Shown here in pieces: positions 12,389-63,930 of a DNA stretch of 64,000 nucleotides (position 1 is the stretch's first letter; each line of letters starts with the position of its first letter). The notes beneath the pieces were generated by a model. That model saw nothing but the letters and a program-made list of their open reading frames with translations. It searched no databases and was not told where the DNA came from. This stretch comes from Macrostomum lignano (lineage: Eukaryota). The stretch is taken from positions 1-64,000 of the forward strand of contig NIVC01000639.1 of assembly GCA_002269645.1 (NCBI GenBank). Direction: 5' to 3'. A program made the translations under genes and the position numbers.

Positions 12389-12825
12389 TCGGTCAGGCGG
12401 CATCCCCAGCCAATCGCAGCGGTCCCCAGCTGCAGCGCCCTGCCCTCTAAATGCGGTTCCCCGGCAGGCCAGCCGCGTCTCCTGTTCGCAGCCCAGCAGA
12501 GACGAAGTGGCAGCCCGCCAGCACCCGCAGAGGAGCAGCTCAGCCCATCGACTCGATACGGCTCAGGATTAGCAGCACGGGAAACCGGTCTGAATAGTCG
12601 ATCGCGGATCAGCAGCTCCGGTGAGGGTCGCCTTGGCAACTCCATTGCACTCCAGGTGTCAATTCTCTCTGGGATTTCAGTGCCAGAGTTGATGGCGTCT
12701 CAGCTAATTCGGGGGGGATTTCAGACTTGAGATGCGGCTTGATGGAGAGGCTTGCGGCCAGGAGTGGAAAGTAGCTCAATACTTGGCTGGTAAGCACAGG
12801 CGGAGTGAAGCTCATCATAAGCAGC

Positions 12826-14740
12826 GGAGTGACACCTCAGCACAGTAAGCAGAGTGACACCCCTCAGCACAGAAAGCAGAGTGACACCTCAGCACAGTAA
12901 GCAAAGTGACACAGTAAGCAGAGTGACACAATCCAGCACAGTAAGCAGAGTGACACACTCCAGCACAGTAAGCAGAGTGACACACTCCAGCACAGTAAGC
13001 AGAGTGACACCCCAGCACAGTAAGCAGAGTGACACCCCAGCACAGTAAGCAGAGTGACACCCCAGCACAGTAAGCAGAGTGACACCCCAGCACAGTAAGC
13101 AGAGTGACACCCCAGCACAGTAAGCAGAGTGACACCCCAGCACAGTAAGCAGAGTGACACTCCAGCACAGTTAGCAGAGTGATACCCCAGCACAGTAAGC
13201 AGAGTGACACTCCAGCACAGTTAGCAGAGTGACACCCCAGCACAGTAAGCAGAGTGACATCCCAGCACAGTAAGCAGAGTGACACCCCAGCACAGTAAGC
13301 AGAGTGACACTCCAGCACAGTAAGCAGAGTGACACCCCAGCACAGTAAGCAAAGTGACACCCCAGCACAGTAAGCAGAGTGACACCCCCCAACCCCCCCC
13401 CCAGCACAGTAAGCAGGGTGACACCCCAGCACAGTAAGCAGGGTGACACCCCAGCACAGTAAACAGGGTGACACCCCAGCACAGTAAACAGGGTGACACC
13501 CCAGCACAGTAAGCAGGGTGACACCCCAGCACAGTAAGCAGGGTGACACCCCAGCACAGTAAGCAGGGTGACACCCCAGCACAGTAAGCAGAGTGACACC
13601 CCCCAGCACAGTAAGCAGAGTGACACCCCCAGCACAGTAAGCAGAGTGACACCCCCGGCACAGTAAGCAGAGTGACACCCCAGCAGAGTAAGCAGGGTGA
13701 CACCCCAGCACAGTAAGCAGGGTGACACCCCAGCACAGTAAGCAGAGTGACACCCCCCAGCACAGTAAGCAGAGTGACACCCCCCAGCACAGTAAGCAGA
13801 GTGACACCCCCCAGCACAGTAAGCAGAGTGACACCCCCAGCACAGTAAGCAGAGTGACACCCCCGGCACAGTAAGCAGAGTGACACCTCAGCACAGTAAG
13901 CAGAGTGACACCCCAGCACAGTAAGCAGAGTGACACTCCAGCACAGTTAGCAGAGTGACACCCCAGCACAGTAAGCAGAGTGACACTCCAGCACAGTTAG
14001 CAGAGTGACACCCCAGCACAGTAAGCAGAGTGACATCCCAGCACAGTAAGCAGAGTGACACCCCAGCACAGTAAGCAGAGTGACACTCCAGCACAGTAAG
14101 CAGAGTGACACCCCAGCACAGTAAGCAAAGTGACACCCAGCACAGTAAGCAGAGTGACACCCCCCAACCCCCCCCCCCCAGCACAGTAAGCAGGGTGACA
14201 CCCCAGCACAGTAAGCAGGGTGACACCCCAGCACAGTAAACAGGGTGACACCCCAGCACAGTAAACAGGGTGACACCCCAGCACAGTAAGCAGGGTGACA
14301 CCCCAGCACAGTAAGCAGGGTGACACCCCAGCACAGTAAGCAGGGTGACACCCCAGCACAGTAAGCAGGGTGACACCCCAGCACAGTAAGCAGAGTGACA
14401 CCCCCCAGCACAGTAAGCAGAGTGACACCCCCCAGCACAGTAAGCAGAGTGACACCCCCGGCACAGTAAGCAGAGTGACACCCCAGCACAGTAAGCAGGG
14501 TGACACCCCAGCACAGTAAGCAGGGTGACACCCCAGCACAGTAAGCAGAGTGACACCCCCCAGCACAGTAAGCAGAGTGACACCCCCCAGCACAGTAAGC
14601 AGAGTGACACCCCCCAGCACAGTAAGCAGAGTGACACCCCCAGCACAGTAAGCAGAGTGACACCCCCGGCACAGTAAGCAGAGTGACACCTCAGCACAGT
14701 AAGCAGAGTGACACCCCAGCACAGTAAGCAGAGTGACACC
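12826..14740. repeat. 24-27-bp minisatellite CAGCACAGTAAGCAGAGTGACACCC with a higher-order duplication
   Basis: Diagnostic variants recur about 776 bp apart (13381 and 14157). Confidence 0.95.
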
Positions 14741-19939: not shown

Positions 19940-21897
19940 GAACATTCAGACACATTCAGACACATTCAGACACATTCAGACACATTCAGACACATGCAGA
20001 CACATGAAGACACATGAAGACACATGAAGACACATGAAGACACATGAAGACACATGAAGACACATGAAGACACATGAAGACACATGCATACACATTAAGA
20101 CACATGCAGACACATGAAGACACATGCATACACATTAAGACACATGCAGACACATTAAAACACATGAAGACACATGCAGACACATTGGGCCGTATGCAGA
20201 AAGCCAAGTCCAGACTAGCTAGTCCGGACTTGTGTAGTTCAGTCTATAGTCTATGGTCTAGCTAGCCTAGTTCTGCTATAGTAGACTGGTCTAACTTTGC
20301 GTTTCTGCATACCAAATCCAAGTCCAGACTAGCTTTTCAAGACCGGACTACCCTAGACAGAGCTTTCTGCATACGGCCCATTAAGACACATGAAGACACA
20401 TGAAGACACATGCATACACATTAAGACACATGAAGACACATGCAGACACATGCAGACACATGAAGACACATGAAGGCACATGAAGACACATGCATACACA
20501 TTAAGACACATGCAGACACATGAAGACACATTAAGACACATGCATACACATTAAGACACATGCAGACACATGCAGACACATTAAGACACATGAAGACACA
20601 TGCAGACACATTAAGACACATGAAGACACATGCAGACACATGCAGACACATGAAGACACATGAAGACACATGAAGACACATTCAGACACATTCAGACACA
20701 TGCAGACACATGAAGACACATTAAGACACATGCATACACATTAAGACACATGCAGACACATGAAGACACATGCATACACATTAAGACACATGCAGACACA
20801 TTCAGACACATTCAGACACATTCAGACACATGCAGACACATGAAGACACATGAAGACACATGAAGACACATGAAGACACATGAAGACACATGAAGACACA
20901 TGCAGACACATGAAGACACATGAAGACACATGCAGACACAAGAAGACACATGAAGACACATGAAGACACATGAAGACACATAAAGACACATGCAGACACA
21001 AGAAGACACATGAAGACACATGAAGACACATGAAGACACATGAAGACACATGAAGACACATGCAGACACGTTAAGACACATGAAGACACATGCAGACACA
21101 TGCAGACACATGAAGACACATGCATACACATTAAGACACATGCAGACACATGAAGACACATGAAGACACATGCATACACATTAAGACACATGCAGACACA
21201 TGAAGACACATGCATACACATTAAGACACATGCAGACACATTAAAACACATGAAGACACATGCAGACACATGAAGACACATGCATACACATTAAGACACA
21301 TGCAGACACATGAAGACACATGCAGACACATTAGGACACATGAAGACACATGCAGGCACATTAAGACACATGAAGACACATTAAAACACATTCAGACACA
21401 TGAAGACACATGCAGACACATTAAGACACATTAAGACACATGCAGGCACATTAAGACACATGCAGACACATTAAAACACGTGAAGACACATGCAGACACA
21501 TGAAGACACATGCATACACATTAAGACACATTAAGACACATGAAGACACATGCAGGCACATTAAGACACATGAAGACACATGCAGGCATATGAAGACACA
21601 TGCATACACATTAAGACACATGCAGACACATTAAGACACATTAAGACACATGCAGGCACATTAAGACACATGCAGGCACATTAAGACACATGAAGACACA
21701 TGCAGGCACATTAAGACACATGAAGACATTTGCAGGCACATTAAGACACATGAAGACACATGCAGGCACATTAAGACACATGAAGACACATGCAGACACA
21801 TTAAGACACATGAAGACACATGCAGGCACATTAAGACACATGAAGACACATGCAGGCACATTAAGACACATGAAGACATTAAAACACATGAAGACAC
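19940..21897. repeat. 10-bp satellite (GAAGACACAT and variants)
   Basis: Seen directly; interrupted by a MITE at 20187-20379. Confidence 0.95.
20187..20379. mobile_element. 193-bp MITE, PIF/Harbinger-like
   Basis: Perfect 18-bp TIRs GGGCCGTATGCAGAAAGC / GCTTTCTGCATACGGCCC and 3-bp duplication ATT (20184-20186, 20380-20382). Confidence 0.85.
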
Positions 21898-22689
21898 ATG
21901 ATAAAGAGCATTTTATGACACTGGGACAGACAAAAGTACATAAAGCATTCAGGACAGGCAAATTTGCAGAAGCTCAGCTCAGTCTCACCCAGACGGACGC
22001 ACCGCAGTCCTGCACTAATCCTGACAGGCCAGTTTAAGCAGATAATAAAATCAACCCCTGCAACTATGCGACCCCCTTCAAAAACTTTCACCTGTTGCTG
22101 TAATTACTTTCGCTTCGTGTTAATTTTCTTCAGCGCGTCTTTTTGCACACAAACCCCGCGTCTTTAATCAGTTCAATGCGAGCGGGTGCGGCGCCAGCCG
22201 CTGGGCAGCTCACAATGCAGCCCTCAATACGGCTCACAATGCAGCCCTCAATACGGCTCACAATGCAGCCCTAATCAGCTCCGCAGCCTGAGCGAGTGCA
22301 CGCATGCTTTACCTATTTTTACTTTTTCGGATCATTTTTTCGGGCTTGTCGAGGGGGTTGGAAGCTGGCTAAGAAGCCCCGAAGCCACTCTGGGACAGCC
22401 AAATAAATATATGGCCCTCCCAGCCACAGCAGCAGCCTGGGGCATCAGTGCGCATCGATCTCCACTGCGCCAGTAATGAGCCAGCGAAGCTGCTGCGAAG
22501 CCAGCCTCAGCTCGTGTGTCGCATAAATCACCTGCCGCCGTCTGCCCGCTGGCTGCCGCATCTGGCTTGGCGGGCACAATGCAAACCGGAACTCCCCTGA
22601 CTTCCGGACTTTCCCTCTCACAAGGCCCGCTGCCCCCCCTCAGTGCAACTGGCTGCCTTCTGACCTCTGACCACTCACCCCCTGCTGTC

Positions 22690-24789: not shown

Positions 24790-27120
<2,331 letters not shown>

Positions 27121-27429
27121 CCTGCTTGTCTGCTATCGATCTCTGCATTTATTTATCTGAATGTCTATGAGACAATTGTGGCTCCAACCGTGAAGCCACA
27201 GAGCGTACACTACATGCCTGTACACCCTGTCTGAGCGTGTGGCTGCGTACAGAATCCACTTGCGCGCGCACTCAGGGGTCGGCGGAATGGGCATGACTGC
27301 CTGCCTCTTCAGATGGGTCGCAAACAGTACGAGAAGTTAAGCAGAGTAGGTCGCGGTTAGAAAGCAGCTGAACAGGTTTGAACATTGCGTCTTACTAGCG
27401 ACTTTGCCGAGAGCGGCAAACTAAGCTGA

Positions 27430-31230: not shown

Positions 31231-32194
31231 ATTGAAACGAAAAATTATATTGGTTTTTCCCATATTATAATCGTTTCCTTCTGCCAACAGTTCAGGAAGA
31301 CAACGAACAATGGACCTCGATGGTAACTTTCTCTGTGTGATCTCTAGAGTCACATTCTCAAACTTCAGGCGAGGATCTTTCCTCTTCAATCAGTATATTT
31401 TATAAGCTAGCACACTGTACGCGAGCAACGAGGAATAGGAGCAGTAGGGAGAGAGAGTGGGATTTCGAGGCCCAATAGGCAGTGTCGGTCAGAGGTTGTG
31501 CATGCATCACGCGAGGGTCGCATGGCTGGGCTTCTTGCTCGCCGATCATCAGGACTATTTTTAGGCATGCAGATCTTGTGCATCTGGGGAGTTGCTGCCA
31601 AGGCTGGATGCTTGTTCACGCATCACGCGCGTGTCGGCTGATTTCTCCCATCCTCTTGCTAACGGCGCCTTCGTTTCACTTCAGTACGATAAAATAGTTC
31701 TCAGCTCCAATCTCCGCAGTGTAAAAGTTCCGACAGCTTTTTAGTACGTCCCCACGGAGATTAGATGCGGCAAGCGCGAAAACCAGTGTAAAGCATTATC
31801 TGCAAGCATGGCAGGCGAGCCAGAGGCACACAAAGGAATCTCGGTCACCCCGCGTGAGCATGAGATCACAGAGATCACAGAGGGCAATCAGACACGAATT
31901 CGTGGCTTCTGTCCCAGTTTGACCCCTCGGTCTCCAGCGATGCCTTCGTAACATCCAAGCGTAGTAGGGATTTTTTTCTGGGGAAATCTGTGCTTCTCGG
32001 AATTTGTCACGCTTTTCTCCTTTGAGTAAATCAGCCCGCGCCCGGATCAGTGCGAGCTCAACCGAGTGGAAATTATTGAGCAAAGAGAAATTCGTGCTCT
32101 GAAAAGTCTGATGTAGCTGTGAGATTCTGGATACTTGCAGAACCTGAATGCCACAGTCGCTTAAGCAGTTGCAGTGCAGTGAGTGTCTTAATGG

Positions 32195-33600
32195 TGAAGT
32201 GTCTTGATGGTGAAGTGTCGGGTTAGTGAAGTGTCGGGTTGGTGAAGTGTCGGGTTGGTGAAGTGTCGGGTTGGTGAAGTGTCGGGTTGGTGAAGTGTTG
32301 GGTTGGTGAAGTGTCGGGTTGGTGAAGTGTCGGGTTGGTGAAGTGTCGGGTTGGTGAAGTGTCGGGTTGGTGAAGTGTCGGGTTGGTGAAGTGTCGGGTT
32401 GGTGAAGTGTCGGGTTGGTGAAGTGTCGGGTTGGTGAAGTGTCGGGTTGGTGAAGTGTCGGGTTGGTGAAGTGTCGGGTTGGTGAAGTATTGGGTTGGTG
32501 AAGTGTCGGGTTGGTGAAGTGTCGGGCTGGTGAAGTGTCGGGTTGGTGAAGTGTCGGGTTGGTGAAGTGTCGGGTTGGTGAAGTGTCGGGTTGGTGAAGT
32601 GTCGGGTTGGTGAAGTATCGGGTTGGTGAAGTGTCGGGTTGGTGAAGTGTCGGGTTGGTGAAGTGTCGGGTTGGTGAAGTGTCGGGTTGGTGAAGTGTCG
32701 GGTTGGTGAAGTATCGGGTTGGTGAAGTGTCGGGTTGGTGAAGTGTCGGGTTGGTGAAGTGTCGGGTTGGTGAAGTGTCGGGTTGGTGAAGTGTCGGGTT
32801 GGTGAAGTGTCGGGTTGGTGAAGTGTCGGGTTGGTGAAGTGTCGGGTTGGTGAAGTGTCGGGTTGGTGAAGTGTCGGGTTGGTGAAGTATTGGGTTGGTG
32901 AAGTGTCGGGTTGCTGGAATTTTGGGTTGGTGAAGTGTCGGGTTGGTGAAGTGTCGGGTTGGTAAAGTGTCGGGTTGGTGAAGTGTCGGGTTGGTGAAGT
33001 GTCGGGTTGGTGAAGTGTCGGGTTGGTGAAGTGTCGGGTTGGTGAAGTGTCGGGTTGGTGAAGTGTCGGGTTGGTGAAGTGTCGGGTTGGTGAAGTGTCG
33101 GGTTGGTGAAGTGTCGGGTTGGTGAAGTGTCGGGTTGGTGAAGTGTCGGGTTGGTGAAGTGTCGGGTTGGTGAAGTGTCGGGTTGGTGAAGTGTCGGGTT
33201 GGTGAAGTGTCGGGTTGGTGAAGTGTCGGGTTGGTGAAGTGTCGGGTTGGTGAAGTGTCGGGTTGGTGAAGTGTCGGGTTGGTGAAGTATTGGGTTGGTG
33301 AAGTGTCGGGTTGCTGGAATTTTGGGTTGTGAAGTGTCGGGTTGGTGAAGTATCGGGTTGGTGAAGTGTCGGGTTGGTGAAGTGTCGGGTTGGTGAAGTG
33401 TCGGGTTGGTGAAGTGTCGGGTTGGTGAAGTGTCGGGTTGGTGAAGTGTCGGGTTGGTGAAGTGTCGGGTTGGTGAAGTGTCGGGTTGGTGAAGTGTCGG
33501 GTTGGTGAAGTGTCGGGTTGGTGAAGTGTCGGGTTGGTGAAGTATCGGGTTGGTGAAGTGTCGGGTTGGTGAAGTGTCGTGTTGGTGAAGTGTCGGGCTG
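32195..33600. repeat. 16-bp minisatellite GGTGAAGTGTCGGGTT
   Basis: Seen directly. Confidence 0.96.
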
Positions 33601-51061: not shown

Positions 51062-52405
51062 TTGTCCTCATCCTCATCCTCATCCTCATCATCATCCTCA
51101 TCCTTATCATCATCCTCATCCTCATCCTCATCCTCATCCTCATCCTCATCCTCATCCTCATTTTTATCCTCATCCTCATCCTCATCCTCATCCTCATCCT
51201 CATCCTCATTCTCATCCTCATCCTCATCCTCATCCGCATCCTCATCCTCATCCTCATTCTCATCCTCATCCTCATCCTCATCCTCATCCTCATCCTCATT
51301 TTTATCCTCATCCTCATCCTCATCCTCATCCTCATCCGCATCCTCATCCTCATCCTCATCCTCATCCTCATCCTCATTTTTATCCTCATCCTCATCCTCA
51401 TCCTCATCCTCATCCGCATCCTCATCCTCATCCTCATCCTCATCCTCATCCTCATCCTCATTTTTATCCTCATCCTCATCCTCATTTTCATCCTCATCCT
51501 CATTTTCATCCTCATCCTCATCCTCATCCTCATCCTCATCCTTATCCTTATCCTCATCCTCATCCTTATCATCATCCTCATTCTCATCCTCATCCTCATC
51601 CTCATCCTCATCCTCATCCTTATCCTCATCCTCATCCTCATCCTCATCCTCATCCTCATCCTCATCCTCATTCTCATCCTCATCCTCATCCTCATCCTCA
51701 TCCTCATTTTCATCCTCATCCTCATCCTCATCCTCATCCTCATCCTCATCCTCATCCTCATCCTCATTTTCATCCTCATCCTCATTCTCATTCTCATCCT
51801 CATTCTCATTCTCATCCTCATCCTCATCCTCATCCGCATCCTCATCCTCATCCTCATCCTCATCCTCATCCTCATTCTCATTTTTATCCTCATCCTCATC
51901 CTCATTTTCATCCTCATTTTTATCCTCATCCTCATCCTCATTTTTATCCTCATCCTCATCCTCATTTTCATCCTCATCCTCATCCTCATCCTCATCCTCA
52001 TTCTCATCCTCATTCTCATTCTCATTCTCATCCTCATCCTCATCCGCATCCTCATCCTCATCCTCATTTTTATCCTCATCCTCATCCTCATTTTTATCCT
52101 CATCCTCATCCTCATTTTCATCCTCATCCTCATTCTCATCCGCATCCTCATCCTCATCCTCATTCTCATCCTCATCCTCATCCTCATCCTCATCCTCATC
52201 CTCATTTTTATCCTCATCCTCATCCTCATCCTCATCCTCATCCGCATCCTCATCCTCATCCTCATTTTCATTCTCATTCTCATTCTCATCCTCATCCTCA
52301 TCCTCATCCTCATCCTCATTTTTATCCTCATTCTCATCCTCATTTTCATTCTCATCCTCATTCTCATTCTCATTCTCATCCTCATTCTCATTCTCATCCT
52401 CATCC
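51062..52405. repeat. (ATCCTC)n
   Basis: Seen directly. Confidence 0.97.
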
Positions 52406-53304
52406 CCATGCCGGGAACTCCCACTACTCTACTCATTTTCCTTCGAGCCGAGCGCTCAAAGCTGTATCCTTGGCCACACATCTTGCCGTACGGCCCGTCA
52501 GTTCGGATCCCAGCAGCTCCGACATCTCCCAGCCTCACCGCAGATCTCTGGCCAATCCGCGCAGATCCCGCTCGACATCGCCGTGATGATTGCCAGAAGA
52601 AGTTTCGCATCAGCTCCCCGTGAATTTGCCTCGGATCGCAGATTTGCCTTGGCAACTCAGTGCACTTTTGCAAGCTCAAACCGCTGGGCCGGATCGGCAG
52701 TTCGCAGCGGGGCGCCGCCCCATCCCCAATTCGTCAGCATGGAGATCTTCAACCAGAGTCCAGGAGGAGGCTACAGCCGACCTAGCATCAGCTTCCACTA
52801 GCTTCATCATCACTCCTGTTGCGGACTTCTGAGTTTCAAAGCACCCACAAGTTTATCGAGAAAGTTTTCCATGAAATGCTACCCAATGCTAAATTTTCTT
52901 GAAGTTCCAGAGAATCTGCACTCCAGACCCTGCTTCTAGGTGGCCTTGGTTCTCAAACTCGCTTCCCTAACTCGCTTAAGTCACTCGCTGGGTTGCTAAT
53001 TTCTTGTTGGACGAAACCGCACAGGCCGGGGGGGGGGGAGAGAAAGTCCTCGAACTCCGGGTTGTCAGGCCAGCTCAGATCGCTTGTTTATCCATCGTGT
53101 CAGCCGTTTCTCGCTCAACTGTTCGCCGACTTTCTCTTTGATATTGTGCACTGGAGTCCTGTCTCTGCTTTTGTGACTCCGTTTAGTGGAGCGGAATGAA
53201 ATTGGGATGCCAGCTCAGGGCTTGGACTAGTTGAGAAGTTGCCAGCGATAAGCGGGCTGGATAAGTCAGTTCAGGCCGCAGCTACGCATCGGGAGCAGTT
53301 GTGT

Positions 53305-55334: not shown

Positions 55335-56678
55335 GCAGCACATCCACATGCACATCCACATCCACATCCACATCCACATCCACATGCACATCCACATCCA
55401 CATCCACATGCACATCCACATCCCCATCCACATCCACATGCACATCCACATCCACATCCACATCCACATCCACATGCACATGCACATCCACATGCACATC
55501 CACATCCACATCCACATCCACATCCACATCCACATCCACATCCACATCCACATCCACATCCACATCCACATCCACATCCACATCCACATCCACATCCACA
55601 TCCACATCCACATGCACATCCACATGCACATCCACATCCACATCCACATGCACATCCACATGCACATCCACATCCACATCCACATCCACATCCACATCCA
55701 CATCCACATCCACATCCCCATCCACATCCACATGCACATCCACATCCACATCCACATCCACATCCACATCCACATGCACATGCACATCCACATCCACATC
55801 CACATCCACATCCACATCCACATCCACATCCACATCCCCATCCACATCCACATGCACATGCACATCCACATCCACATGCACATCCACATCCACATGCACA
55901 TGCACATCCACATCCACATCCACATCCACATCCACATCCACATCCACATGCACATGCACATCCACATCCACATCCACATCCACATCCACATCCACATCCA
56001 CATGCACATGCACATCCACATCCACATCCACATCCACATCCACATCCACATGCACATGCACATGCACATCCACATCCACATGCACATCCACATCCACATG
56101 CACATCCACATCCACATCCACATCCACATCCACATCCACATGCACATGCACATCCACATCCACATCCACATCCACATCCACATCCACATCCACATGCACA
56201 TGCACATCCACATCCACATCCACATCCACATCCACATGCACATGCACATCCACATCCACATCCACATCCACATCCACATCCACATCCACATCCACATCCA
56301 CATCCACATCCACATCCACATCCACATCCACATCCACATCCCCATCCCCATCCACATGCACATCCACATCCACATCCACATCCACATCCACATCCACATC
56401 CACATCCACATCCACATCCACATCCACATCCACATCCACATCCACATCCACATCCACATCCACATCCACATCCACATCCACATCCACATCCCCATCCACA
56501 TCCACATCCACATCCACATCCACATCCACATCCACATCCACATCCACATCCACATCCACATCCACATGCACATCCACATCCACATCCACATCCACATCCA
56601 CATGCACATCCACATCCACATCCACATCCACATTCACATCAACATCCACATCCACATCAACATCCACATCCACATGCA
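55335..56678. repeat. (CACATC)n
   Basis: Seen directly. Confidence 0.97.
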
Positions 56679-57309
56679 CAGAAGAGCCGCATGCACTGCA
56701 GTCGCACCAGATGCCCCCTCAAGAAAGATGTGGTAACTTTTATTTTGACCTCGAATTCGTCAGCTTTCTCCGGCCGGAGGGGGTCCCCAGTGGCTGAGGG
56801 TGGAGTCTAGCGGAATGGGCGACGCTCGCCTCCCCGCTGCGTCTTCGGACCGCCCTGCAGCTAAGAGGGGCGGAGTCAAAAGTTTCCTGAAAGATCAGCG
56901 GAGTTACATGGAAGGTCGCAGCTCGAGACCCCGGAGCCACAGCAACATGCAGCGGATGTTTAGAAATGCTGGATCAAATTTGATGAGGCAGTCTATTTGC
57001 ATAATTGTCTTCTGCAAGGCACTGCATCACCGTATGAATTTGCAGAAGGCTCGACACATGCGTTCAGTGAAATGCAGTTACAGCCAGCCGATCAAAATGG
57101 CGTCAACAAGTGGAATGAACTGCGGTATTCACGAGTCTTATGCATTGTTATGCATTTGAGCATGCATATGTTCGGTAGATACTACTGATGCTGAGATAAA
57201 GGTGTGACGTTTTGGGGATTATTTTTGGTATGATAAAATTGGAATTCGTCGAACTTTTATTCGACTATAAATTGGAAGAGTAGACGGTGAGAATTCGCCA
57301 TGAAGTGTG

Positions 57310-58290: not shown

Positions 58291-58794
58291 GGTTGCTTGG
58301 CTTTTCAATATTCTCTGGCATTCGAATCAGAGAATGCCCTCCAGCTGCGTGCCACTGGACGAGCGAGCTGCCAATAATCCCAGCGGGTTGGGTTTCCGCA
58401 CGCGGCTCCTGACCAAAATCTATTTTTAATATCGATTTTTTCGTAGCCCCTCCTCCGTCGAGGTTCTTCTCAGAACTGGCAACGGCTGCGCAACTCCTGC
58501 AGAGGCGCTGCCGCATTCTGTTGGCTGCCCCGACCAGCTGTCCCCGCGCCCCTGCCTGGAAACTGTCTCCACGTATTTTCACCCGCTCTCTCCCCTGTGG
58601 AAGCCCAGAAAAGGCAGATCAACTTCACGGGAAGGAGAGGATTCGAGTGCTGTTGCTATCCGCGCGGACACGCCCTGGATCTGAGATCGTGAGTTGCTTC
58701 TTCAACTGTTTTCTGCCTTTCCTGCCGTTTATGCTGCACAGGGAGCTTGATCACAGTGAGCACAGTGAGAATTGACTCTGAGAATTGTCTATAC

Positions 58795-59505
58795 GACAAT
58801 GAGAATTGGCTATAGGACTATGAGAATTGGCTATAGGACTATGAGAATTGGCTATAGGACTATGCGAATTGGCTATAGGACTATGCGAATTGGCTATAGG
58901 ACCATGAGAATTGGCTATAGGACTATGCGAATTGGCTATAGGACTATGCGAATTGGCTATAGGACTATGCGAATTGGCTATAGGACTATGCGAATTGGCT
59001 ATAGGACCATGAGAATTGGCTATAGGACTATGCGAATTGGCTATAGGACTATGAGAATTGGCTATAGGACTATGCGAATTGGCTATAGGACTATGCGAAT
59101 TGGCTATAGGACTATGCGAATTGGCTATAGGACCATGAGAATTGGCTATAGGACTATGCGAATTGGCTATAGGACTATGCGAATTGGCTATAGGACTATG
59201 CGAATTGGCTATAGGACTATGCGAATTGGCTATAGGACCGTGAGAATTGGCTGTAGGACTATGAGAATTGGCTATAGGACTATGCGAATTGGCTATAGGA
59301 CTATGCGAATTGGCTATAGGACTATGAGAATTGGCTATAGGACTATGCGAATTGGCTATAGGACTATGCGAATTGGCTATAGGACCGTGAGAATTGGCTG
59401 TAGGACTATGAGAATTGGCTATAGGACTATGCGAATTGGCTATAGGACTATGCGAATTGGCTATAGGACCATGAGAATTGGCTATAGGACTATGAGAATT
59501 GGCCA
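58795..59505. repeat. 21-bp repeat GAATTGGCTATAGGACTATG(A/C)
   Basis: Seen directly. Confidence 0.96.
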
Positions 59506-60119
59506 TTTCAAGCCAGTAGAAAAGCACTGGCGGAAAGAATCGCAACTGCCAAACTGCACATTTTAACAATCATTTCCAAATTGCAGCTAGTAACTCAGCA
59601 GTTTCAAAGCGGGTCTCTCCTCTGCTCAACAGTTTTAAAGCAGACGTGAGAAATTGCAGAAAATTTGACCGAAAGAAACAAAAGAATCGGAAAAGTCAAG
59701 CTTTGAAAGAGTAACCGCTGGAGGGCAGGAAATGCTGCAGTTGTTAACTTTGACTGGCTTGACTTTCATGAAAGCAGAGTCTCTCGAGTGGGCGGAGATG
59801 CTGCGGTCTCCCCCTCTCTCTCGCCGCCCCTCTACCCTTCATTTCTCTCGGCATTTCCAACCGCAGCGCACACTGGCAGCCCCCCCCCCAATTTCGAACT
59901 TGAAGCAGAGAGCGGCGGGGACTTCTCTTATCGCTCGCTGCACAGCCACCTGCGGCAAAATTTCCATAGCGGGCAAGCGAGGCGGCAGGGGGGGGCCGTG
60001 GGAGGCGGGCACAGGAAGTCAAGCGGCCCGAACAGATGTGTATTTATGAAGGAGTCGCTGGCAGCTGCAACTGCTTTCGCTATTCTCTGCAAACGAAATT
60101 TCCAGGTGGTGAAAAAACT

Positions 60120-62479
60120 ATGGCCGAAGCCGAAAACGCCAAGGAGATCGAACCCGCGACCGCCGCCGATGGGCAGCAGCAGCAGCAGGCGGGAGGCATC
60201 AGGCAGCGAATCCGCGGCCTGCTGAAGAGGAAGGACCGGCAGAAGCAGCAGAAGGAGCGGCCGGATGACGCGGTGAAGCTGGGCTGCGGCGGCCTGTTCC
60301 GCCGGAAGAAGCGGGCGGAGGCGGGCGATCAGGAGTCGCAGAAGCCGGCGGAGAAGCCGAAGAAAAGCGGCAAAGGCGGCGAAGTAAAGGTAGGCGAACT
60401 GGTTGCAGTTTACTTGAGCTCATTTCCTGCTGCATGAAGTTTTACTTTTTATGATCATATCGGAGCTTTGGCCAGCATGCATTTGCTCTGCTTGCTGATT
60501 GTACGAAGGGGCATTAGGGACATCAGAGACATCAGGGACATCAGGGACATCAGAAACATCAGGGACATCAGGGACATCAGAAACATCAGGGACATCAGGG
60601 ACATCAGAAACATCAGGGACATCAGGGACATCAGGGATATCAGAGACATTAGGGACATCAGGGACATCAGAGACAGTAGGGACATCAGAAACATCAGGGA
60701 CATCAGAGACATCAGAGACATTAGGGACATCAGAGACATCAGAGACATTAGGGACATCAGAGACATCAGAGACATTAGGGACATCAGGGACAGAAACATT
60801 AGGGACATCAGGGACATCAGAAACATTAGGGACATCAGGGACATCAGAAACATTAGGGACGTCAGGGACATCAGGGACATCAGGGACATCAGGGACATCA
60901 GAGACATCAGGGACATCAGGGACATCAGGGACATCAGGGACATCAGGGACATCAGGGACATCAGGGACATCAGGGTCAGCAATGGCCGTAGAACTCAAAT
61001 TTGCTTCTAGGAAGAGAAGCAGGAGGTGGAGCTGCAGCCGCAGCCGCAGCAGCCAGATGCGGCCTCAGCGTCAGCGGCAGAGCCGGAGACGTCAGCGCTG
61101 GAGCAGCCGGCATCGAAAGCGCCGGCGAGACCCGAGAATCCGCCAAGGCCGCTGGTTGAACTGGCGGCGAAGTCTGCGCCACAGCCGGACGAGGATGTCA
61201 GTGAGAAGACGGAAGAGAACGCAGCGGAAGAGAACGCAGCGGAGGAAGACAAGACGACAGTTCAGAACGGCCACGCTTTGGAGAGCGAGCCAGAGTCAGA
61301 AAATCAGCGACACGAAGAGGCGGAGCGGCAGTTCCAGCAGGCCTCGGTGGACATGGCGGACGTGACGCCGAAGCCGGGAGTGACAGTAAGGCCTTGAGGC
61401 AAAAGTGGCGATTGCTGCCGCAACGGGTATTAGCTGATCAATAGTTTGCTGACCGCAGTATTTCATAGCTACGAGTGTTTAATGCTTGCTTTTTTACTCG
61501 CCTCGGCTGCTGCTGTTTACTCAACTGGTGAAGGCCGCTTTTGTCGATAAGACCAATTATTGTTGACGGTTTATAGATATCAGCTGCGGGGTCAGGTTGG
61601 GGTCAAGCTGGGGACAGGCTGGGGTCAGGCTATGGTCAAGCTGGGGTCAGGCTGGGGTCAGGCTGGGGTCAGGCTAGGGTCAGGCTAGGGTCAGGCTGGG
61701 GTCAGGCTGGGGGCAGGCTGGGGACAGGCTGGGGACAGGCTGGGGACAGGCTGGGGACAGGCTGGGGACAGGCTGGGGGCAGGCTGGGGTCAGGCTAGGG
61801 TCAGGCTAGGGTCAGGCTGGGGTCAGGCTGGGGGCAGGCTGGGGGCAGGCTGAAGTCAGGCTGAGCGAATGCTTGATACATGTATGAAACGCCAAGCAGT
61901 TCTACTCATAGTAGTGAAAGGAAGATATGTAGATAAATCTTGTAAAAGCGCTGCCGTATATACAGGGGGATAAAAAGACTGCTGCTTACATTATTTCTGA
62001 GAGCGCAAACATTTGGCCATTTCTGCTTTCAGATTGAGCAGGGCCCGCACACGGAGATATGGTCCAGCATCATTAACAAGAGCTTCATCGGTACCGGAGC
62101 CTTCAAGCGAGCCGCGGTCTGCAGCCTGGAGTCTGGCGCCGTGCTGGCCTGCAACCCCGCTGACTTCACGCCCACCGTGCAGCAGGTGGCCGCCCTGCGC
62201 GAGAACTTCGACTGCCGCTCCGGCCTGTCCGCGGCCGGCTTCGGAGTGGCCGACACGGTGTACAGCCTGCTGGACGAGGCCGGCACCAAGGACATTCTGT
62301 GCGGCAGCGACGAATCGCGCGGCCAGACGCTGCTGGTCTGCAAAACGAAGACGGCGCTGCTGGCGGCCGCGTGCCAGGGCGCCCCGGACCGCGCCGCCGA
62401 CATGCTGGGCGACATGCGGCAGCACTTCATCTCGCAGGGATGTGAGGGCTGCCCGACTGCAAGCGCCGAGTCTCAGTAA
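60120..62479 (+). CDS. Profilin-domain protein with long charged N-terminal extension (about 363 aa, 3 exons)
   Basis: Exons 60120-60389, 61011-61385 (GTAAGG donor) and 62033-62479, all phase 0. Last exon WSSIINKSFIGTGAFKRAAVCSLESGAVLA...VCKTKTALL...DMRQHFISQG follows the profilin pattern. The exon 2-3 join is inferred. Confidence 0.72.
60512..60975. repeat. (CATCAGGGA)n
   Basis: Intron 1 of the profilin-domain gene. Confidence 0.95.
61585..61865. repeat. 11-bp repeat CAGGCTGGGG(T/A)
   Basis: Intron 2 of the profilin-domain gene. Confidence 0.92.
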
Positions 62480-63364
62480 GACGCAGCAGCACTTCAAATC
62501 TATGGAAATATTTTTAGGCATTGGTGAGGAGGATTTCCAAGTTATTTTAGCACTAGAACTCACTTCCTGAGCATTCGAAAGTGAATTTTAAAAGTACAAA
62601 TTTCAGTTTATACTTAATCAAAAGTTTTCAAACGGTTAAAACTTAAACTGCAACTAATGCAGTTCCGGAAATCTTCCAATCCGATTGTAACATTAAAACA
62701 AATGTAGTTCTGCTGATTTGAAGTGTTCATCTGTCTCTGGACCCCGACTGGTTGACAGACAACATTGTGGCTTCCCATTGACGTGTCGAATGCATGATTA
62801 TTAAATTTTCATCTGCATCATTAGCCTAGCAATGAAGCCGCGCTCTGCTGCGAATGCCAGTGGCGGATTTGGTTTTTACTGTTATCGTTTTATTTACGTA
62901 ATAAATTTTTAACATTTTGTGTTTCTTTTGGCTCCAATTCAAACTGTCAGCAGATTTTTATGATTAGAGCAATCAGCTGATGATTTTGCTTTCCTAAAAA
63001 AACTAGGAATATTCGACTCTAGGATCCTACTTTTTGATTATAATATATCTGTACTCGATGGCTTATCAAATAAAAATTTACTTTTCCTGTCTCAAGCTTC
63101 CGATATTTTATTATCATTAAAGCGGCCCAGCTCTTCAGTCAGCTCTGGTGACTGACTCGTCAGATATTGACTTTTCTGCTGTAAATGCGCGCCCAATGAC
63201 TGATTGGCAGTTACCCATATCATTAACATAATGAGTTGCACCTGCGATTTTCAGCCAGATGCTATAAATAAAATTGATATTTCAGCTGAAAAATGTCAAT
63301 TTTTCAAAATGCAATTTCAGCTGAAAAATACTCAACCCTTTGTTGTAATTTTCGTGAAATTCTC

Positions 63365-63930
63365 ACTATGAGCAGGCCAGCTATTCTCACTATGAGCAGA
63401 CCAGCTATTCTCACTATGAGCAGACCAGCTATTCTCACTATGAGCAGACCAGCTATTCTCACTATGAGCAGATCAGCTATTCTCACTATGAGCAGACCAG
63501 CTATTCTCACTATGAGCAGACCAGCTATTCTCACTATGAGCAGACCAGCTATTCTCACTATGAGCAGATCAGCTATTCTCACTATGAGCAGATCAGCTAT
63601 TCTCACTATGAGCAGACCAGCTATTCTCACTATGAGCAGACCAGCTATTCTCACTATGAGCAGACCAGCTATTCTTTACTATGAGCAGACCAGCTATTCT
63701 CACTATGAGCAGATCAGCTATTCTCACTATGAGCAGACCAGCTATTCTCACTATGAGCAGACCAGCTATTCTCACTATGAGCAGATCAGCTATTCTCACT
63801 ATGAGCAGACCAGCTATTCTCACTATGAGCAGACCAGCTATTCTCACTATGAGCAGACCAGCTATTCTCACTATGAGCAGGCCAGCTATTCTCACTATGA
63901 GCAGGCCAGCTATTCTCACTATGAGCAGGC
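63365..63930. repeat. 24-bp repeat GAGCAGACCAGCTATTCTCACTAT
   Basis: Seen directly. Confidence 0.96.

What the first reader, a model, noticed from the sequence alone, without database searches (positions are those of the whole stretch)
60120..62479. Profilin fold fused to a ~220-aa disordered basic-then-acidic N-terminus
Seen: the profilin-like exon has no ATG of its own and starts at a ttctgctttcAG acceptor. The upstream Glu/Ala-rich exon has ACA-GTAAGG in phase 0, giving one open frame of about 363 aa. Exon 1 has basic clusters (LKRKDRQK, FRRKKR). Established: profilins are normally single-domain proteins of about 125-140 aa, and poly-proline binding uses an aromatic patch (W3, Y6, W31 and C-terminal aromatics). 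Here only the first Trp is clearly kept, as in the divergent profilin-4 type. Inference: an unusual profilin architecture, possibly membrane- or nucleus-targeted rather than a G-actin chaperone.
Basis: partly seen in the sequence, partly recalled or inferred. Interest (0 to 1): 0.7.

Follow-up and report, generated by a model that had tools for sequence, protein, structure and literature searches.

The report
Flatworm profilin with long disordered head
This is a real, transcript-supported gene of the flatworm Macrostomum lignano. It joins a conserved basic tail and an optional acidic spacer to a divergent profilin fold, an unstudied design shared by several flatworm paralogues and relatives.

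Summary
Exons 60120-60389, 61011-61385 and 62033-62479 are all phase 0, have GT-AG borders and give 363 aa. This is exactly GenBank model BOX15_Mlig019338g1 of Macrostomum lignano, which was built from RNA-seq.

- **Profilin domain.** The last exon scores 49.9 bits against Pfam Profilin (cut-off 25). Its predicted fold matches S. pombe profilin (TM 0.89).
- **Head region.** It is basic (+9, pI 10.0), then acidic (-20, pI 4.2), and is predicted to be disordered.
- **The fusion is not an artefact.** An intronless cDNA contig from a related species carries basic head and profilin in one ORF. Exon 1 is under purifying selection (dN/dS 0.29, against 0.25 for the profilin exon). Two further M. lignano paralogues have the same three-exon plan.
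- **Exon 2 is a cassette.** It is skipped in one annotated copy and absent from the other species' cDNA.
- **Family placement.** The domain belongs to a divergent subfamily; every relative that carries a species name is a flatworm. It keeps Trp3 and His133 but not Tyr6, Trp31, Tyr139 or the basic actin-contact residues. It is not demonstrably profilin-4.
- **Function (inferred).** The conserved GCGGLF(R/K)RK(K/T)R motif suggests membrane tethering of a profilin fold that binds actin and poly-proline poorly.

It is a new variant of a known kind, of moderate interest.

The parts
60012..60119 (+). 5' UTR of the annotated transcript. It holds an upstream ATG at 60036 that is in frame here.
   Evidence: P0001 (GenBank, 5'-partial) reads through from 60012. 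The upstream ATG is out of frame in sister copy L003 (A7 against A6), so the conserved start is 60120. The cDNA of the related species starts at the equivalent MA(N/E)AE.
60120..60389 (+). Exon 1: 90 aa, basic disordered head (net +9, pI 10.0).
   Evidence: dN/dS is 0.29 against cDNA L001. GC3 is 0.87. pLDDT is below 50.
60192..60233 (+). Basic motif 1, GGIRQRIRGLLKRK (residues 25-38).
   Evidence: Kept as GGIGQRLRGLLRRK in the related species, GGLRQRIRDLLLRR in tandem copy B, and GGFRFFWKKKK in paralogue C. AlphaFold predicts a low-confidence helix at 28-43. The basic-hydrophobic score exceeds 0.6 at residues 31-39. Its hydrophobic moment is no better than shuffles.
60267..60314 (+). Basic motif 2, DAVKLGCGGLFRRKKR (residues 50-65): a conserved Cys followed by a polybasic run.
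   Evidence: Identical in the related species' cDNA. It reads TGCGGLFKRKTR in paralogue C, whose profilin domain is only 49% identical, and LGFCGLLHRTKRR in copy B. Comparable Cys or hydrophobic-plus-basic runs occur in P0023, P0015 and P0016.
60390..61010 (+). Intron 1 (GT...AG), mostly a 9-nt minisatellite at 60507-60975.
   Evidence: Its length is 621, 648 and 351 nt in the three near-identical gene copies, while the flanking exons stay conserved.
61011..61385 (+). Exon 2: 125 aa acidic Glu/Ala/Pro-rich cassette (net -20, pI 4.2), 375 nt, phase 0/0.
   Evidence: Included in P0001 and P0002. Skipped in P0003, although the exon is 100% identical at that locus. Absent from the related species' cDNA. 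The number of ENAAE repeats varies between copies.
61122..61172 (+). Conserved Pro-rich motif PARPENPPRPLVELAAK inside exon 2.
   Evidence: Copy B has PARLESPPRPLLELAKK in an exon 2 that is otherwise unrelated.
61299..61343 (+). Conserved helical motif at the end of exon 2, within RHEEAERQFQQASVDM.
   Evidence: AlphaFold helix 187-201, pLDDT 57-62. Paralogue C has AEAERQRIAEARFQRKSVDM at the same place.
61386..62032 (+). Intron 2 (GTAAGG...TTTCAG) with an 11-nt minisatellite at 61588-61863. If the intron were retained the frame would stop at 61395-61397.
   Evidence: The acceptor TTTCAG also fits the published trans-splice acceptor motif [T/C]TNCAG (PMC8629364).
62033..62479 (+). Exon 3: the whole profilin domain (Pfam match at 62060-62443) plus stop.
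   Evidence: Pfam 49.9 bits. PDB sequence hit to Acanthamoeba profilin. AlphaFold pLDDT 73-92 and Foldseek TM 0.89 to 3d9y. Paralogue C has the same phase-0 exon start.
62437..62439 (+). G3 run where all other copies have G4. It shifts the frame and replaces the ancestral C-terminal Met-stop with CEGCPTASAESQ-stop.
   Evidence: The tail has pLDDT below 50.

Best explanation
**Shown**
- The locus is an expressed Macrostomum lignano gene, BOX15_Mlig019338g1.
- Its product joins a conserved basic, disordered N-terminal region (exon 1) and an alternatively included acidic spacer (exon 2) to a complete profilin fold (exon 3).
- It belongs to a divergent profilin subfamily; every relative that carries a species name is a flatworm. 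Several members carry a basic N-terminal extension.
- M. lignano has three paralogue types with the same three-exon plan: this gene, a tandem copy just beyond the window end, and Mlig010505. Each is present in several near-identical genomic copies.

**Inferred mechanism**
- The basic-hydrophobic motifs of exon 1, above all the conserved GCGGLF(R/K)RK(K/T)R, would tether the protein to acidic membranes. The Cys could be S-acylated and the polybasic run could bind acidic lipids.
- The profilin fold has a degraded poly-proline patch and acidic residues in place of the key basic actin contacts. It would therefore act as a divergent binding module, not as a classical G-actin and poly-proline shuttle.
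- Including the acidic cassette exon would lengthen the linker. It might also electrostatically mask the basic head, so splicing could tune targeting.

Confidence in the identity and architecture is about 0.95. Confidence in the membrane-tether mechanism is about 0.35. The number given below is a blend of the two.
For: **Identity**
- 100% match to a GenBank model. That annotation was built from RNA-seq with StringTie, TACO and TransDecoder (PMC5730564).

**Profilin domain**
-.

**The fusion is real**
- Intronless 934-nt cDNA contig L001 from a related species has head and profilin in one ORF.
- dN/dS is 0.29 for exon 1.
- Tandem copy B and paralogue C have the same exon plan, with exon 3 starting at the same phase-0 codon.
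- Metatranscriptome cDNAs L005 and L006 also encode a basic head plus profilin.

**Cassette exon**
-.

**Membrane hypothesis**
- The Cys-plus-polybasic motif is conserved between paralogues whose profilin domains are only 49% identical.
- The basic-hydrophobic score exceeds 0.6 at residues 31-39 and 56-60.
- Relative P0039 begins MGNKSSS, which resembles a myristoylation signal.

**Degraded ligand sites**
- Y6 to I, W31 to L, Y139 to M, R74 to D, K90 to D, H119 to P, K125 to D, Y128 to G.
- The residue lists come from PMC2694148.
- A separate canonical 130-aa profilin that binds poly-proline and actin exists in a flatworm (PMC7727368).
Against: - No lipid, actin or poly-proline binding has been measured, and no localisation or expression pattern was found.
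- The head matches no known family.
- Its predicted helix is not more amphipathic than shuffled sequence.
- The basic-hydrophobic scale was recalled from memory and is only a heuristic.
I checked it only against published residue numbers.
- Trp3 and the His133 equivalent are kept, and the subfamily profile still scores 55-57 bits on Acanthamoeba profilins. Some classical ligand binding may therefore remain.
- The basic clusters could equally be nuclear localisation signals.
Confidence: 0.55

Rival explanations
1. Nuclear profilin-like protein. The two basic clusters (KRKDRQK and RRKKR) would act as a bipartite or monopartite nuclear localisation signal, so the head directs the profilin fold to the nucleus and not to membranes.
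For: Two conserved basic clusters lie about 22 residues apart in exon 1. The head is disordered and highly charged. That other profilins have nuclear roles is my own background knowledge and was not tested here.
Against: The best-conserved part of the motif is the hydrophobic and Cys portion, GCGGLF, not just the basic residues. Distant relatives keep hydrophobic-plus-basic runs such as GFRFFWKKKK and FLSAFMNIFRTKKK, and one has an MGNKSSS start. These features suit membranes better than importin. No NLS predictor was available.
Confidence: 0.15
2. The main product is a stand-alone profilin of about 138 aa. Exon 3 would be SL trans-spliced at its TTTCAG acceptor. The 35-nt spliced leader ends in ATG, which would be in frame (M-IEQGPH...). 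The head-profilin fusion would then be a minor read-through isoform.
For: The M. lignano leader ends ...TTGCATG and its acceptor motif is [T/C]TNCAG (PMC8629364). The exon 3 acceptor is TTTCAG and the exon starts in phase 0. In tandem copy B, exon 3 itself begins with ATG. About 30-39% of M. lignano genes are trans-spliced.
Against: The annotation pipeline cuts transcripts at trans-splice peaks, yet it left these models whole. The related species' cDNA has the fusion in one ORF with no leader at its 5' end. The head is under purifying selection and conserved across paralogues. The exon 3 acceptors of copy B and paralogue C (CCGCAG) do not fit the motif. No short protein of this kind appeared in either protein search.
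Confidence: 0.1
3. An ordinary actin and poly-proline binding profilin that merely carries a fast-evolving, functionally neutral low-complexity extension.
For: The Pfam match covers the full domain. The fold is very close to fungal and amoebal profilins. Trp3 and the His133 equivalent are kept. Exon 2 is repeat-like, varies in length between copies and is dispensable.
Against: Exon 1 has dN/dS 0.29 and sharply conserved motifs across paralogues. Four of five poly-proline aromatic positions are not aromatic, counting His133 as the fifth. The Arg74, Lys90 and Lys125 equivalents are Asp. Ile replaces Tyr6 in every subfamily member in the alignments. A canonical 130-aa profilin exists separately in a flatworm.
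Confidence: 0.12
4. A flatworm orthologue of vertebrate profilin-4, with a sperm or spermatid role like that of PFN4 in the acroplaxome-manchette complex.
For: Like PFN4, it has lost most poly-proline and actin contact residues (PMC2694148). The subfamily profile scores PFN4 at up to 40 bits, while no vertebrate PFN1 or PFN2 chain was listed at E 0.01 or better.
Against: The profile scores amoebal and fungal profilins higher, at 44-57 bits. PFN4 lacks Trp3, keeps Arg74 and has a MYPSVCVEA motif that is absent here. PFN4 also has no N-terminal extension. No expression data were found.
Confidence: 0.1

Closest known systems
Canonical profilins (Pfam PF00235), e.g. Acanthamoeba profilin I (1ACF) and S. 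pombe Cdc3 (3D9Y)
   Same: The domain matches along its full length (49.9 bits). The predicted fold has TM 0.88-0.89 and rmsd 1.7-1.8 Å. Trp3, the GTG turn and the His/Tyr133 position are kept.
   Different: The protein is 227 or 363 aa with a conserved basic head and an optional acidic spacer, not a single domain of about 125-140 aa. Tyr6, Trp31 and the C-terminal aromatic residue are lost. The basic actin contacts are replaced by Asp or Pro.
Vertebrate profilin-4 (PFN4)
   Same: It is a divergent profilin with degraded poly-proline and actin sites. PFN4 is reported to bind phosphoinositides but not poly-proline or actin (PMC2694148).
   Different: PFN4 is 129 aa with no extension. It lacks Trp3, keeps Arg74 and has its own MYPSVCVEA motif. 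Profile scores are lower than for amoebal and fungal profilins. Orthology is not supported.
FhProfilin of Fasciola hepatica (canonical flatworm profilin)
   Same: It is a flatworm protein with a profilin domain.
   Different: It is 130 aa with no extension, keeps the proline-binding residues, and binds poly-L-proline and actin but not phosphoinositides (PMC7727368). I did not have its sequence, so I could not compare it directly.
Asgard (Heimdall and Thor) profilins with an N-terminal extension
   Same: They are profilins with a disordered N-terminal extension (PMC8410842 and bioRxiv 10.1101/2021.08.06.455371, titles and abstracts).
   Different: They are archaeal. The extensions are, as far as I recall, only a few tens of residues, are not basic-then-acidic, and are not spliced. 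There is no sequence relation.
GAP-43, MARCKS and BASP1 type membrane-bound disordered proteins (analogy only)
   Same: They combine a lipidation site or Cys with a polybasic membrane-binding segment, followed by a long acidic Ala/Glu/Pro-rich disordered region. This description is from my own knowledge. The pattern is seen here.
   Different: There is no detectable homology, and none of those proteins carries a profilin fold.

Membership tests
Profilin (Pfam PF00235) | Sequence match above the curated threshold over the whole domain | tested here: met
   49.9 bits against a cut-off of 25, covering profile positions 3-127 of 127. The subfamily profile hits 28 PDB profilins.
Profilin (Pfam PF00235) | Profilin fold: N- and C-terminal helices packed on an antiparallel sheet | tested here: met
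   The AlphaFold model has pLDDT 73-92 with helices 222-234 and 333-349 and seven strands. Foldseek gives TM 0.89 and rmsd 1.7 Å to 3d9y. This is a prediction, not a solved structure.
Profilin (Pfam PF00235) | Aromatic poly-L-proline patch (Trp3, Tyr6, Trp31, His/Tyr133, Tyr/Phe139) | tested here: not met
   The equivalents are W, I, L, H, M. Ile replaces Tyr6 in every subfamily member in the alignments. The residue list is from PMC2694148.
Profilin (Pfam PF00235) | Actin-contact residues (Phe59, Arg74, Arg88, Lys90, His119, Lys125, Tyr128 of PFN1) | tested here: not met
   The equivalents are S, D, gap, D, P, D, G. The result depends on a low-identity alignment. The residue list is from PMC2694148.
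Profilin (Pfam PF00235) | Single-domain protein of about 125-140 aa | tested here: not met
   The protein is 363 aa, or 227 aa without exon 2. The profilin domain occupies residues 225-352.
Profilin (Pfam PF00235) | Binds G-actin, poly-proline ligands and phosphoinositides | not testable with these tools
   This needs recombinant protein assays.
Profilin-4 (PFN4) | Closer to PFN4 than to other profilin groups | tested here: not met
   The subfamily HMM scores real PFN4 sequences at 13-40 bits. It scores Acanthamoeba at 55-57, S. pombe at 49 and yeast at 44 bits. No tree was built.
Profilin-4 (PFN4) | PFN4 sequence signature: no Trp3, Arg74 kept, MYPSVCVEA helix motif, about 129 aa | tested here: not met
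   Here Trp3 is kept, the Arg74 equivalent is Asp, the motif is absent, and the protein has a long head.
Profilin-4 (PFN4) | Testis or spermatid expression | not tested
   The gene identifiers were not found in the text or held supplements of four M. lignano papers.
SL trans-spliced gene of M. lignano | Acceptor of type [T/C]TNCAG with no upstream cis donor, and leader-bearing reads at the site | tested here: inconclusive
   The exon 3 acceptor TTTCAG fits the motif, but cis donors exist upstream and are used in the annotated transcripts. Leader-bearing reads could not be examined.
Lipid-anchored polybasic membrane-binding proteins (GAP-43 or MARCKS-like, by analogy) | Homology to a described family | tested here: not met
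   No Pfam family matches any of five head regions at E up to 10, apart from noise.
Lipid-anchored polybasic membrane-binding proteins (GAP-43 or MARCKS-like, by analogy) | Acylatable Cys or Gly next to a polybasic or hydrophobic stretch that binds acidic lipids | tested here: inconclusive
   The sequence pattern is present and conserved (GCGGLFRRKKR), and the heuristic score exceeds 0.6. The amphipathicity test was not significant. Acylation and lipid binding are untested.

The most novel reading that the evidence does not exclude
Flatworms, and perhaps other small invertebrates seen only in metatranscriptomes, possess a distinct class of membrane-anchored profilin-fold proteins. A conserved S-acylated polybasic head would pin to membranes a profilin domain that has given up actin and poly-proline binding for another ligand. 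An alternatively spliced acidic cassette would act as a switchable auto-inhibitory spacer.
Probability: 0.2. Interest if true: 0.6.

Novelty: new variant of a known kind. Interest (0 to 1): 0.4.

Why it matters
Profilins are textbook single-domain proteins. A conserved lineage in which the fold is permanently joined to a targeting head and has lost the classical ligand residues would show how the fold is re-used, much as PFN4 does in mammals.

Macrostomum lignano has working transgenesis and RNAi, so the idea can be tested directly. Parasitic flukes (Opisthorchis, Paragonimus, Schistosoma) carry relatives, so this may be a flatworm-specific cytoskeletal or membrane component.

It remains one lineage-specific paralogue family without functional data. 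Databases already label it automatically as profilin. The significance is therefore moderate.

Tried and rejected
**Expression and trans-splicing data**
- I searched full texts for the six Mlig gene identifiers. I also searched the held supplements of PMC5730564, PMC5816591 and PMC7336406; PMC8629364 had no supplement held as text. Nothing was found.

**PFN4 orthology**
- I fetched real PFN4 sequences and scored them with the subfamily HMM. The scores were lower than for amoebal and fungal profilins, and the signature residues differ. I rejected PFN4 as a family assignment.

**Amphipathic helix in the head**
- The Eisenberg hydrophobic moment was no better than in shuffled sequence: 17-77% of shuffles reached the observed value.

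**Known families for the head**
- A Pfam scan of five head regions returned only noise.
- The IQ-motif resemblance of IRQRIRGLLKRK is recalled from memory. Pfam gave no support for it.

**Trematode evidence**
- The Opisthorchis felineus model with a basic head spans 198 kb with other genes inside. I do not count it as solid evidence.

**Spliced leader in the window**
- No copy of the leader sequence was found.

**Spurious hits**
- P0009 and P0017 from the exhaustive search are repeat proteins, not profilins.

**Upstream ATG at 60036**
- It is not conserved in frame, so I rejected it as the start codon.
Full report
**What is in the sequence**

The region holds three GC-rich blocks: 60120-60389, 61011-61385 and 62033-62479. 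Two introns separate them, and each intron is largely a minisatellite: a 9-nt unit at 60507-60975 and an 11-nt unit at 61588-61863. The borders are AAG|gtaggc...ttctag|GAA and ACA|gtaagg...ctttcag|ATT. All three exons are multiples of three in phase 0, and the spliced frame gives 363 aa. GC3 is 0.87, 0.73 and 0.88 in the exons, against intron GC of 0.48 and 0.55. Exon 3 has no in-frame ATG before its codon 124.

**Organism and annotation**

The spliced protein is 100% identical over its full length to GenBank PAA79352.1, 'hypothetical protein BOX15_Mlig019338g1, partial', of the free-living flatworm Macrostomum lignano. That annotation is not ab initio. It was built from RNA-seq with StringTie and TACO plus a de novo transcriptome, with ORFs called by TransDecoder. 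A pipeline called TBONE cuts transcripts wherever spliced-leader reads pile up (PMC5730564). The three-exon join thus has transcript support, and the pipeline found no reason to cut before exon 3.

**The profilin domain**

- Exon 3 scores 49.9 bits against Pfam Profilin (cut-off 25) and covers profile positions 3-127 of 127.
- Its best solved relatives by sequence are the Acanthamoeba profilins.
- An AlphaFold model built on a 16-sequence alignment gives pLDDT 73-92 for residues about 215-353. It shows the expected helix, seven strands and helix.
- Foldseek places the model on S. pombe profilin 3d9y (TM 0.89, rmsd 1.7 Å) and Acanthamoeba 1acf (TM 0.88).

**The head region**

Exon 1 has net charge +9 and pI 10.0. 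Exon 2 has net charge -20 and pI 4.2. Both are rich in disorder-promoting residues. AlphaFold gives pLDDT below 50 for residues 1-183, with weak helices at 28-43 and 187-201. No Pfam family matches the head.

**Is the fusion real?**

Five lines of evidence say yes.

1. A 934-nt intronless contig from a public RNA run (L001, SRR28338164) encodes a 243-aa protein. Its profilin part is about 80% identical, so it comes from a related species. Its exon-1-like head runs straight into the profilin domain.
2. Against that cDNA, exon 1 has dN/dS 0.29 and exon 3 has 0.25. The head is constrained about as strongly as the fold.
3. Two near-identical genomic duplicates of the locus, L002 and L003, keep the exons. 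Their intron lengths differ: 621, 648 and 351 nt for intron 1, and 647, 625 and 553 nt for intron 2.
4. A tandem paralogue lies just beyond the window end (L002 10114-11633), and a more distant paralogue exists (Mlig010505, L004, profilin domain 49% identical). Both have the same plan of basic exon, low-complexity exon and profilin exon. In the distant paralogue, exon 3 starts at the same phase-0 codon, IEQ....
5. Two environmental cDNA contigs, L005 and L006, also encode a basic head plus this type of profilin domain in one ORF.

**Exon 2 is a cassette**

It is 375 nt and phase 0/0. It is included in the models at the window and at L003. It is skipped in the model at L002, although the exon there is 100% identical. 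It is absent from the related species' cDNA. Its ENAAE repeat number varies between copies. Two short pieces are conserved in paralogues:
- PARPENPPRPLVELAAK, shared with copy B.
- The terminal AERQ..FQ..SVDM helix, shared with paralogue C.

**Conserved motifs of exon 1**

GGIRQRIRGLLKRK and DAVKLGCGGLFRRKKR are kept in the related species, in copy B and in paralogue C. In paralogue C they read GGFRFFWKKKK and TGCGGLFKRKTR. More distant relatives carry comparable runs of Cys or hydrophobic residues followed by basic residues. One begins MGNKSSS, which looks like a myristoylation signal.

**Family placement**

An exhaustive phmmer search of 1.84 billion representatives found only 17 proteins at E of 0.001 or better. 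Two of these, P0009 and P0017, are spurious repeat proteins. A profile of the subfamily retrieved named relatives only from flatworms: Opisthorchis and Paragonimus in the profile search, and Schistosoma by cluster look-up.

I tested the profilin-4 idea with real PFN4 sequences.
- The subfamily HMM scores them at 13-40 bits.
- It scores Acanthamoeba profilins at 55-57 bits, S. pombe at 49 and yeast at 44. No vertebrate PFN1 or PFN2 chain was listed at E 0.01 or better.
- PFN4 lacks Trp3, keeps Arg74 and has a MYPSVCVEA motif that is absent here.
- PFN4 orthology is therefore not supported, although the functional parallel stands. PFN4 binds phosphoinositides but not poly-proline or actin (PMC2694148).

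A canonical 130-aa profilin that binds poly-proline and actin has been characterised in Fasciola (PMC7727368). This suggests that the present subfamily is an extra, specialised paralogue.

**Ligand sites**

I used the residue lists in PMC2694148 and a MAFFT alignment.
- Poly-proline patch: W3=W, Y6=I, W31=L, H133=H, Y139=M. The Ile at the Tyr6 position is found in every subfamily member in the alignments.
- Actin contacts: R74=D, K90=D, H119=P, K125=D, Y128=G.

**Mechanism (inferred)**

The most economical reading has three parts.
- The basic, Cys-containing head tethers the protein to acidic membranes.
- The profilin fold has diverged away from classical actin and poly-proline binding.
- The acidic cassette acts as a splice-controlled spacer or mask.

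Support is indirect. It consists of motif conservation, a heuristic basic-hydrophobic score above 0.6 at residues 31-39 and 56-60, and the myristoylation-like start of one relative. A hydrophobic-moment test was not significant. Nuclear targeting by the same basic clusters remains possible.

**The trans-splicing rival**

The M. lignano leader ends in ATG and its acceptor motif is [T/C]TNCAG (PMC8629364). The exon 3 acceptor TTTCAG fits, and the leader's ATG would be in frame. A stand-alone profilin isoform of about 138 aa (149 aa on this copy's frameshifted reading) is therefore conceivable. The evidence above makes it unlikely to be the main product. I could not inspect reads.

**Corrections and side findings**

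- The window copy has GGG at 62437-62439, where four other gene copies have GGGG. The orthologue has GGGC at that place and also reads ...SQGM-stop. This replaces the ancestral ...SQGM-stop with an 11-residue-longer tail. It may be a real allele or a long-read homopolymer error.
- An upstream ATG at 60036 is in frame here but out of frame in L003, so 60120 is the conserved start.
- Exon 3 is 99% identical in nucleotides between the tandem paralogues (dS 0.02), while exon 1 has dS 0.57. This indicates gene conversion of the profilin exon.

**Verdict**

The gene is already in databases as an automatically named profilin, but I found no study of it or of its extension. It is a new variant of a known kind. 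Interest is moderate (0.4).

Noticed in passing
L002 10114-11633 (starts about 1.7 kb beyond the window's 3' end): A tandem paralogue has the same three-exon plan. Its exon 1 is 68% identical in nucleotides, its exon 2 is made of EEKTP repeats, and its exon 3 is 99% identical (dS 0.02, against 0.57 for exon 1). This indicates gene conversion confined to the profilin exon. Its exon 3 begins with ATG.
   Followed up: partly
window 62437-62439: A G3 run stands where four other gene copies have G4, and the orthologue (GGGC there) also ends ...SQGM-stop. It shifts the frame and lengthens the C-terminus by 11 residues. It is either a real allele or a long-read homopolymer error.
   Followed up: partly
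window 60036-60038: An upstream ATG is in frame with the main start in the window and in L002, but out of frame in L003. It has a weaker Kozak context than the ATG at 60120.
   Followed up: yes
window 1-64000, e.g. 12823-14740, 20379-21901, 24986-27132, 32192-33597, 51065-52409, 55339-56680, 58774-59503, 63359-63928: The window is packed with long micro- and minisatellite arrays. More than 30 arrays score above 400, with periods from 4 to 155 nt. Most long ORFs in the window are just translations of these repeats.
   Followed up: partly
P0006 (UniProt A0A1I8IN42, 904 aa) and P0005 (421 aa): An older gene prediction fuses the two tandem profilin genes into one 904-aa protein. Another entry, named 'MID_MedPIWI domain-containing protein', looks like a frameshifted translation of the same gene type.
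   Followed up: no
Opisthorchis felineus model P0023 (GCA_004794785.1): This 229-aa model with a basic head spans about 198 kb and has three other genes inside its intron. Its first exon assignment is doubtful, even though its head resembles the Macrostomum motifs.
   Followed up: partly
L006 78-746 (JGI metatranscriptome 3300073458): A relative of unknown organism starts MGNKSSS, a myristoylation-like N-terminus, ahead of a basic stretch and the profilin domain.
   Followed up: no
window 61122-61172: The Pro-rich motif PPRPLVEL is conserved between exon 2 sequences that are otherwise unrelated. It could be an SH3-type ligand or an intramolecular ligand for the profilin domain. I did not test either idea.
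   Followed up: no
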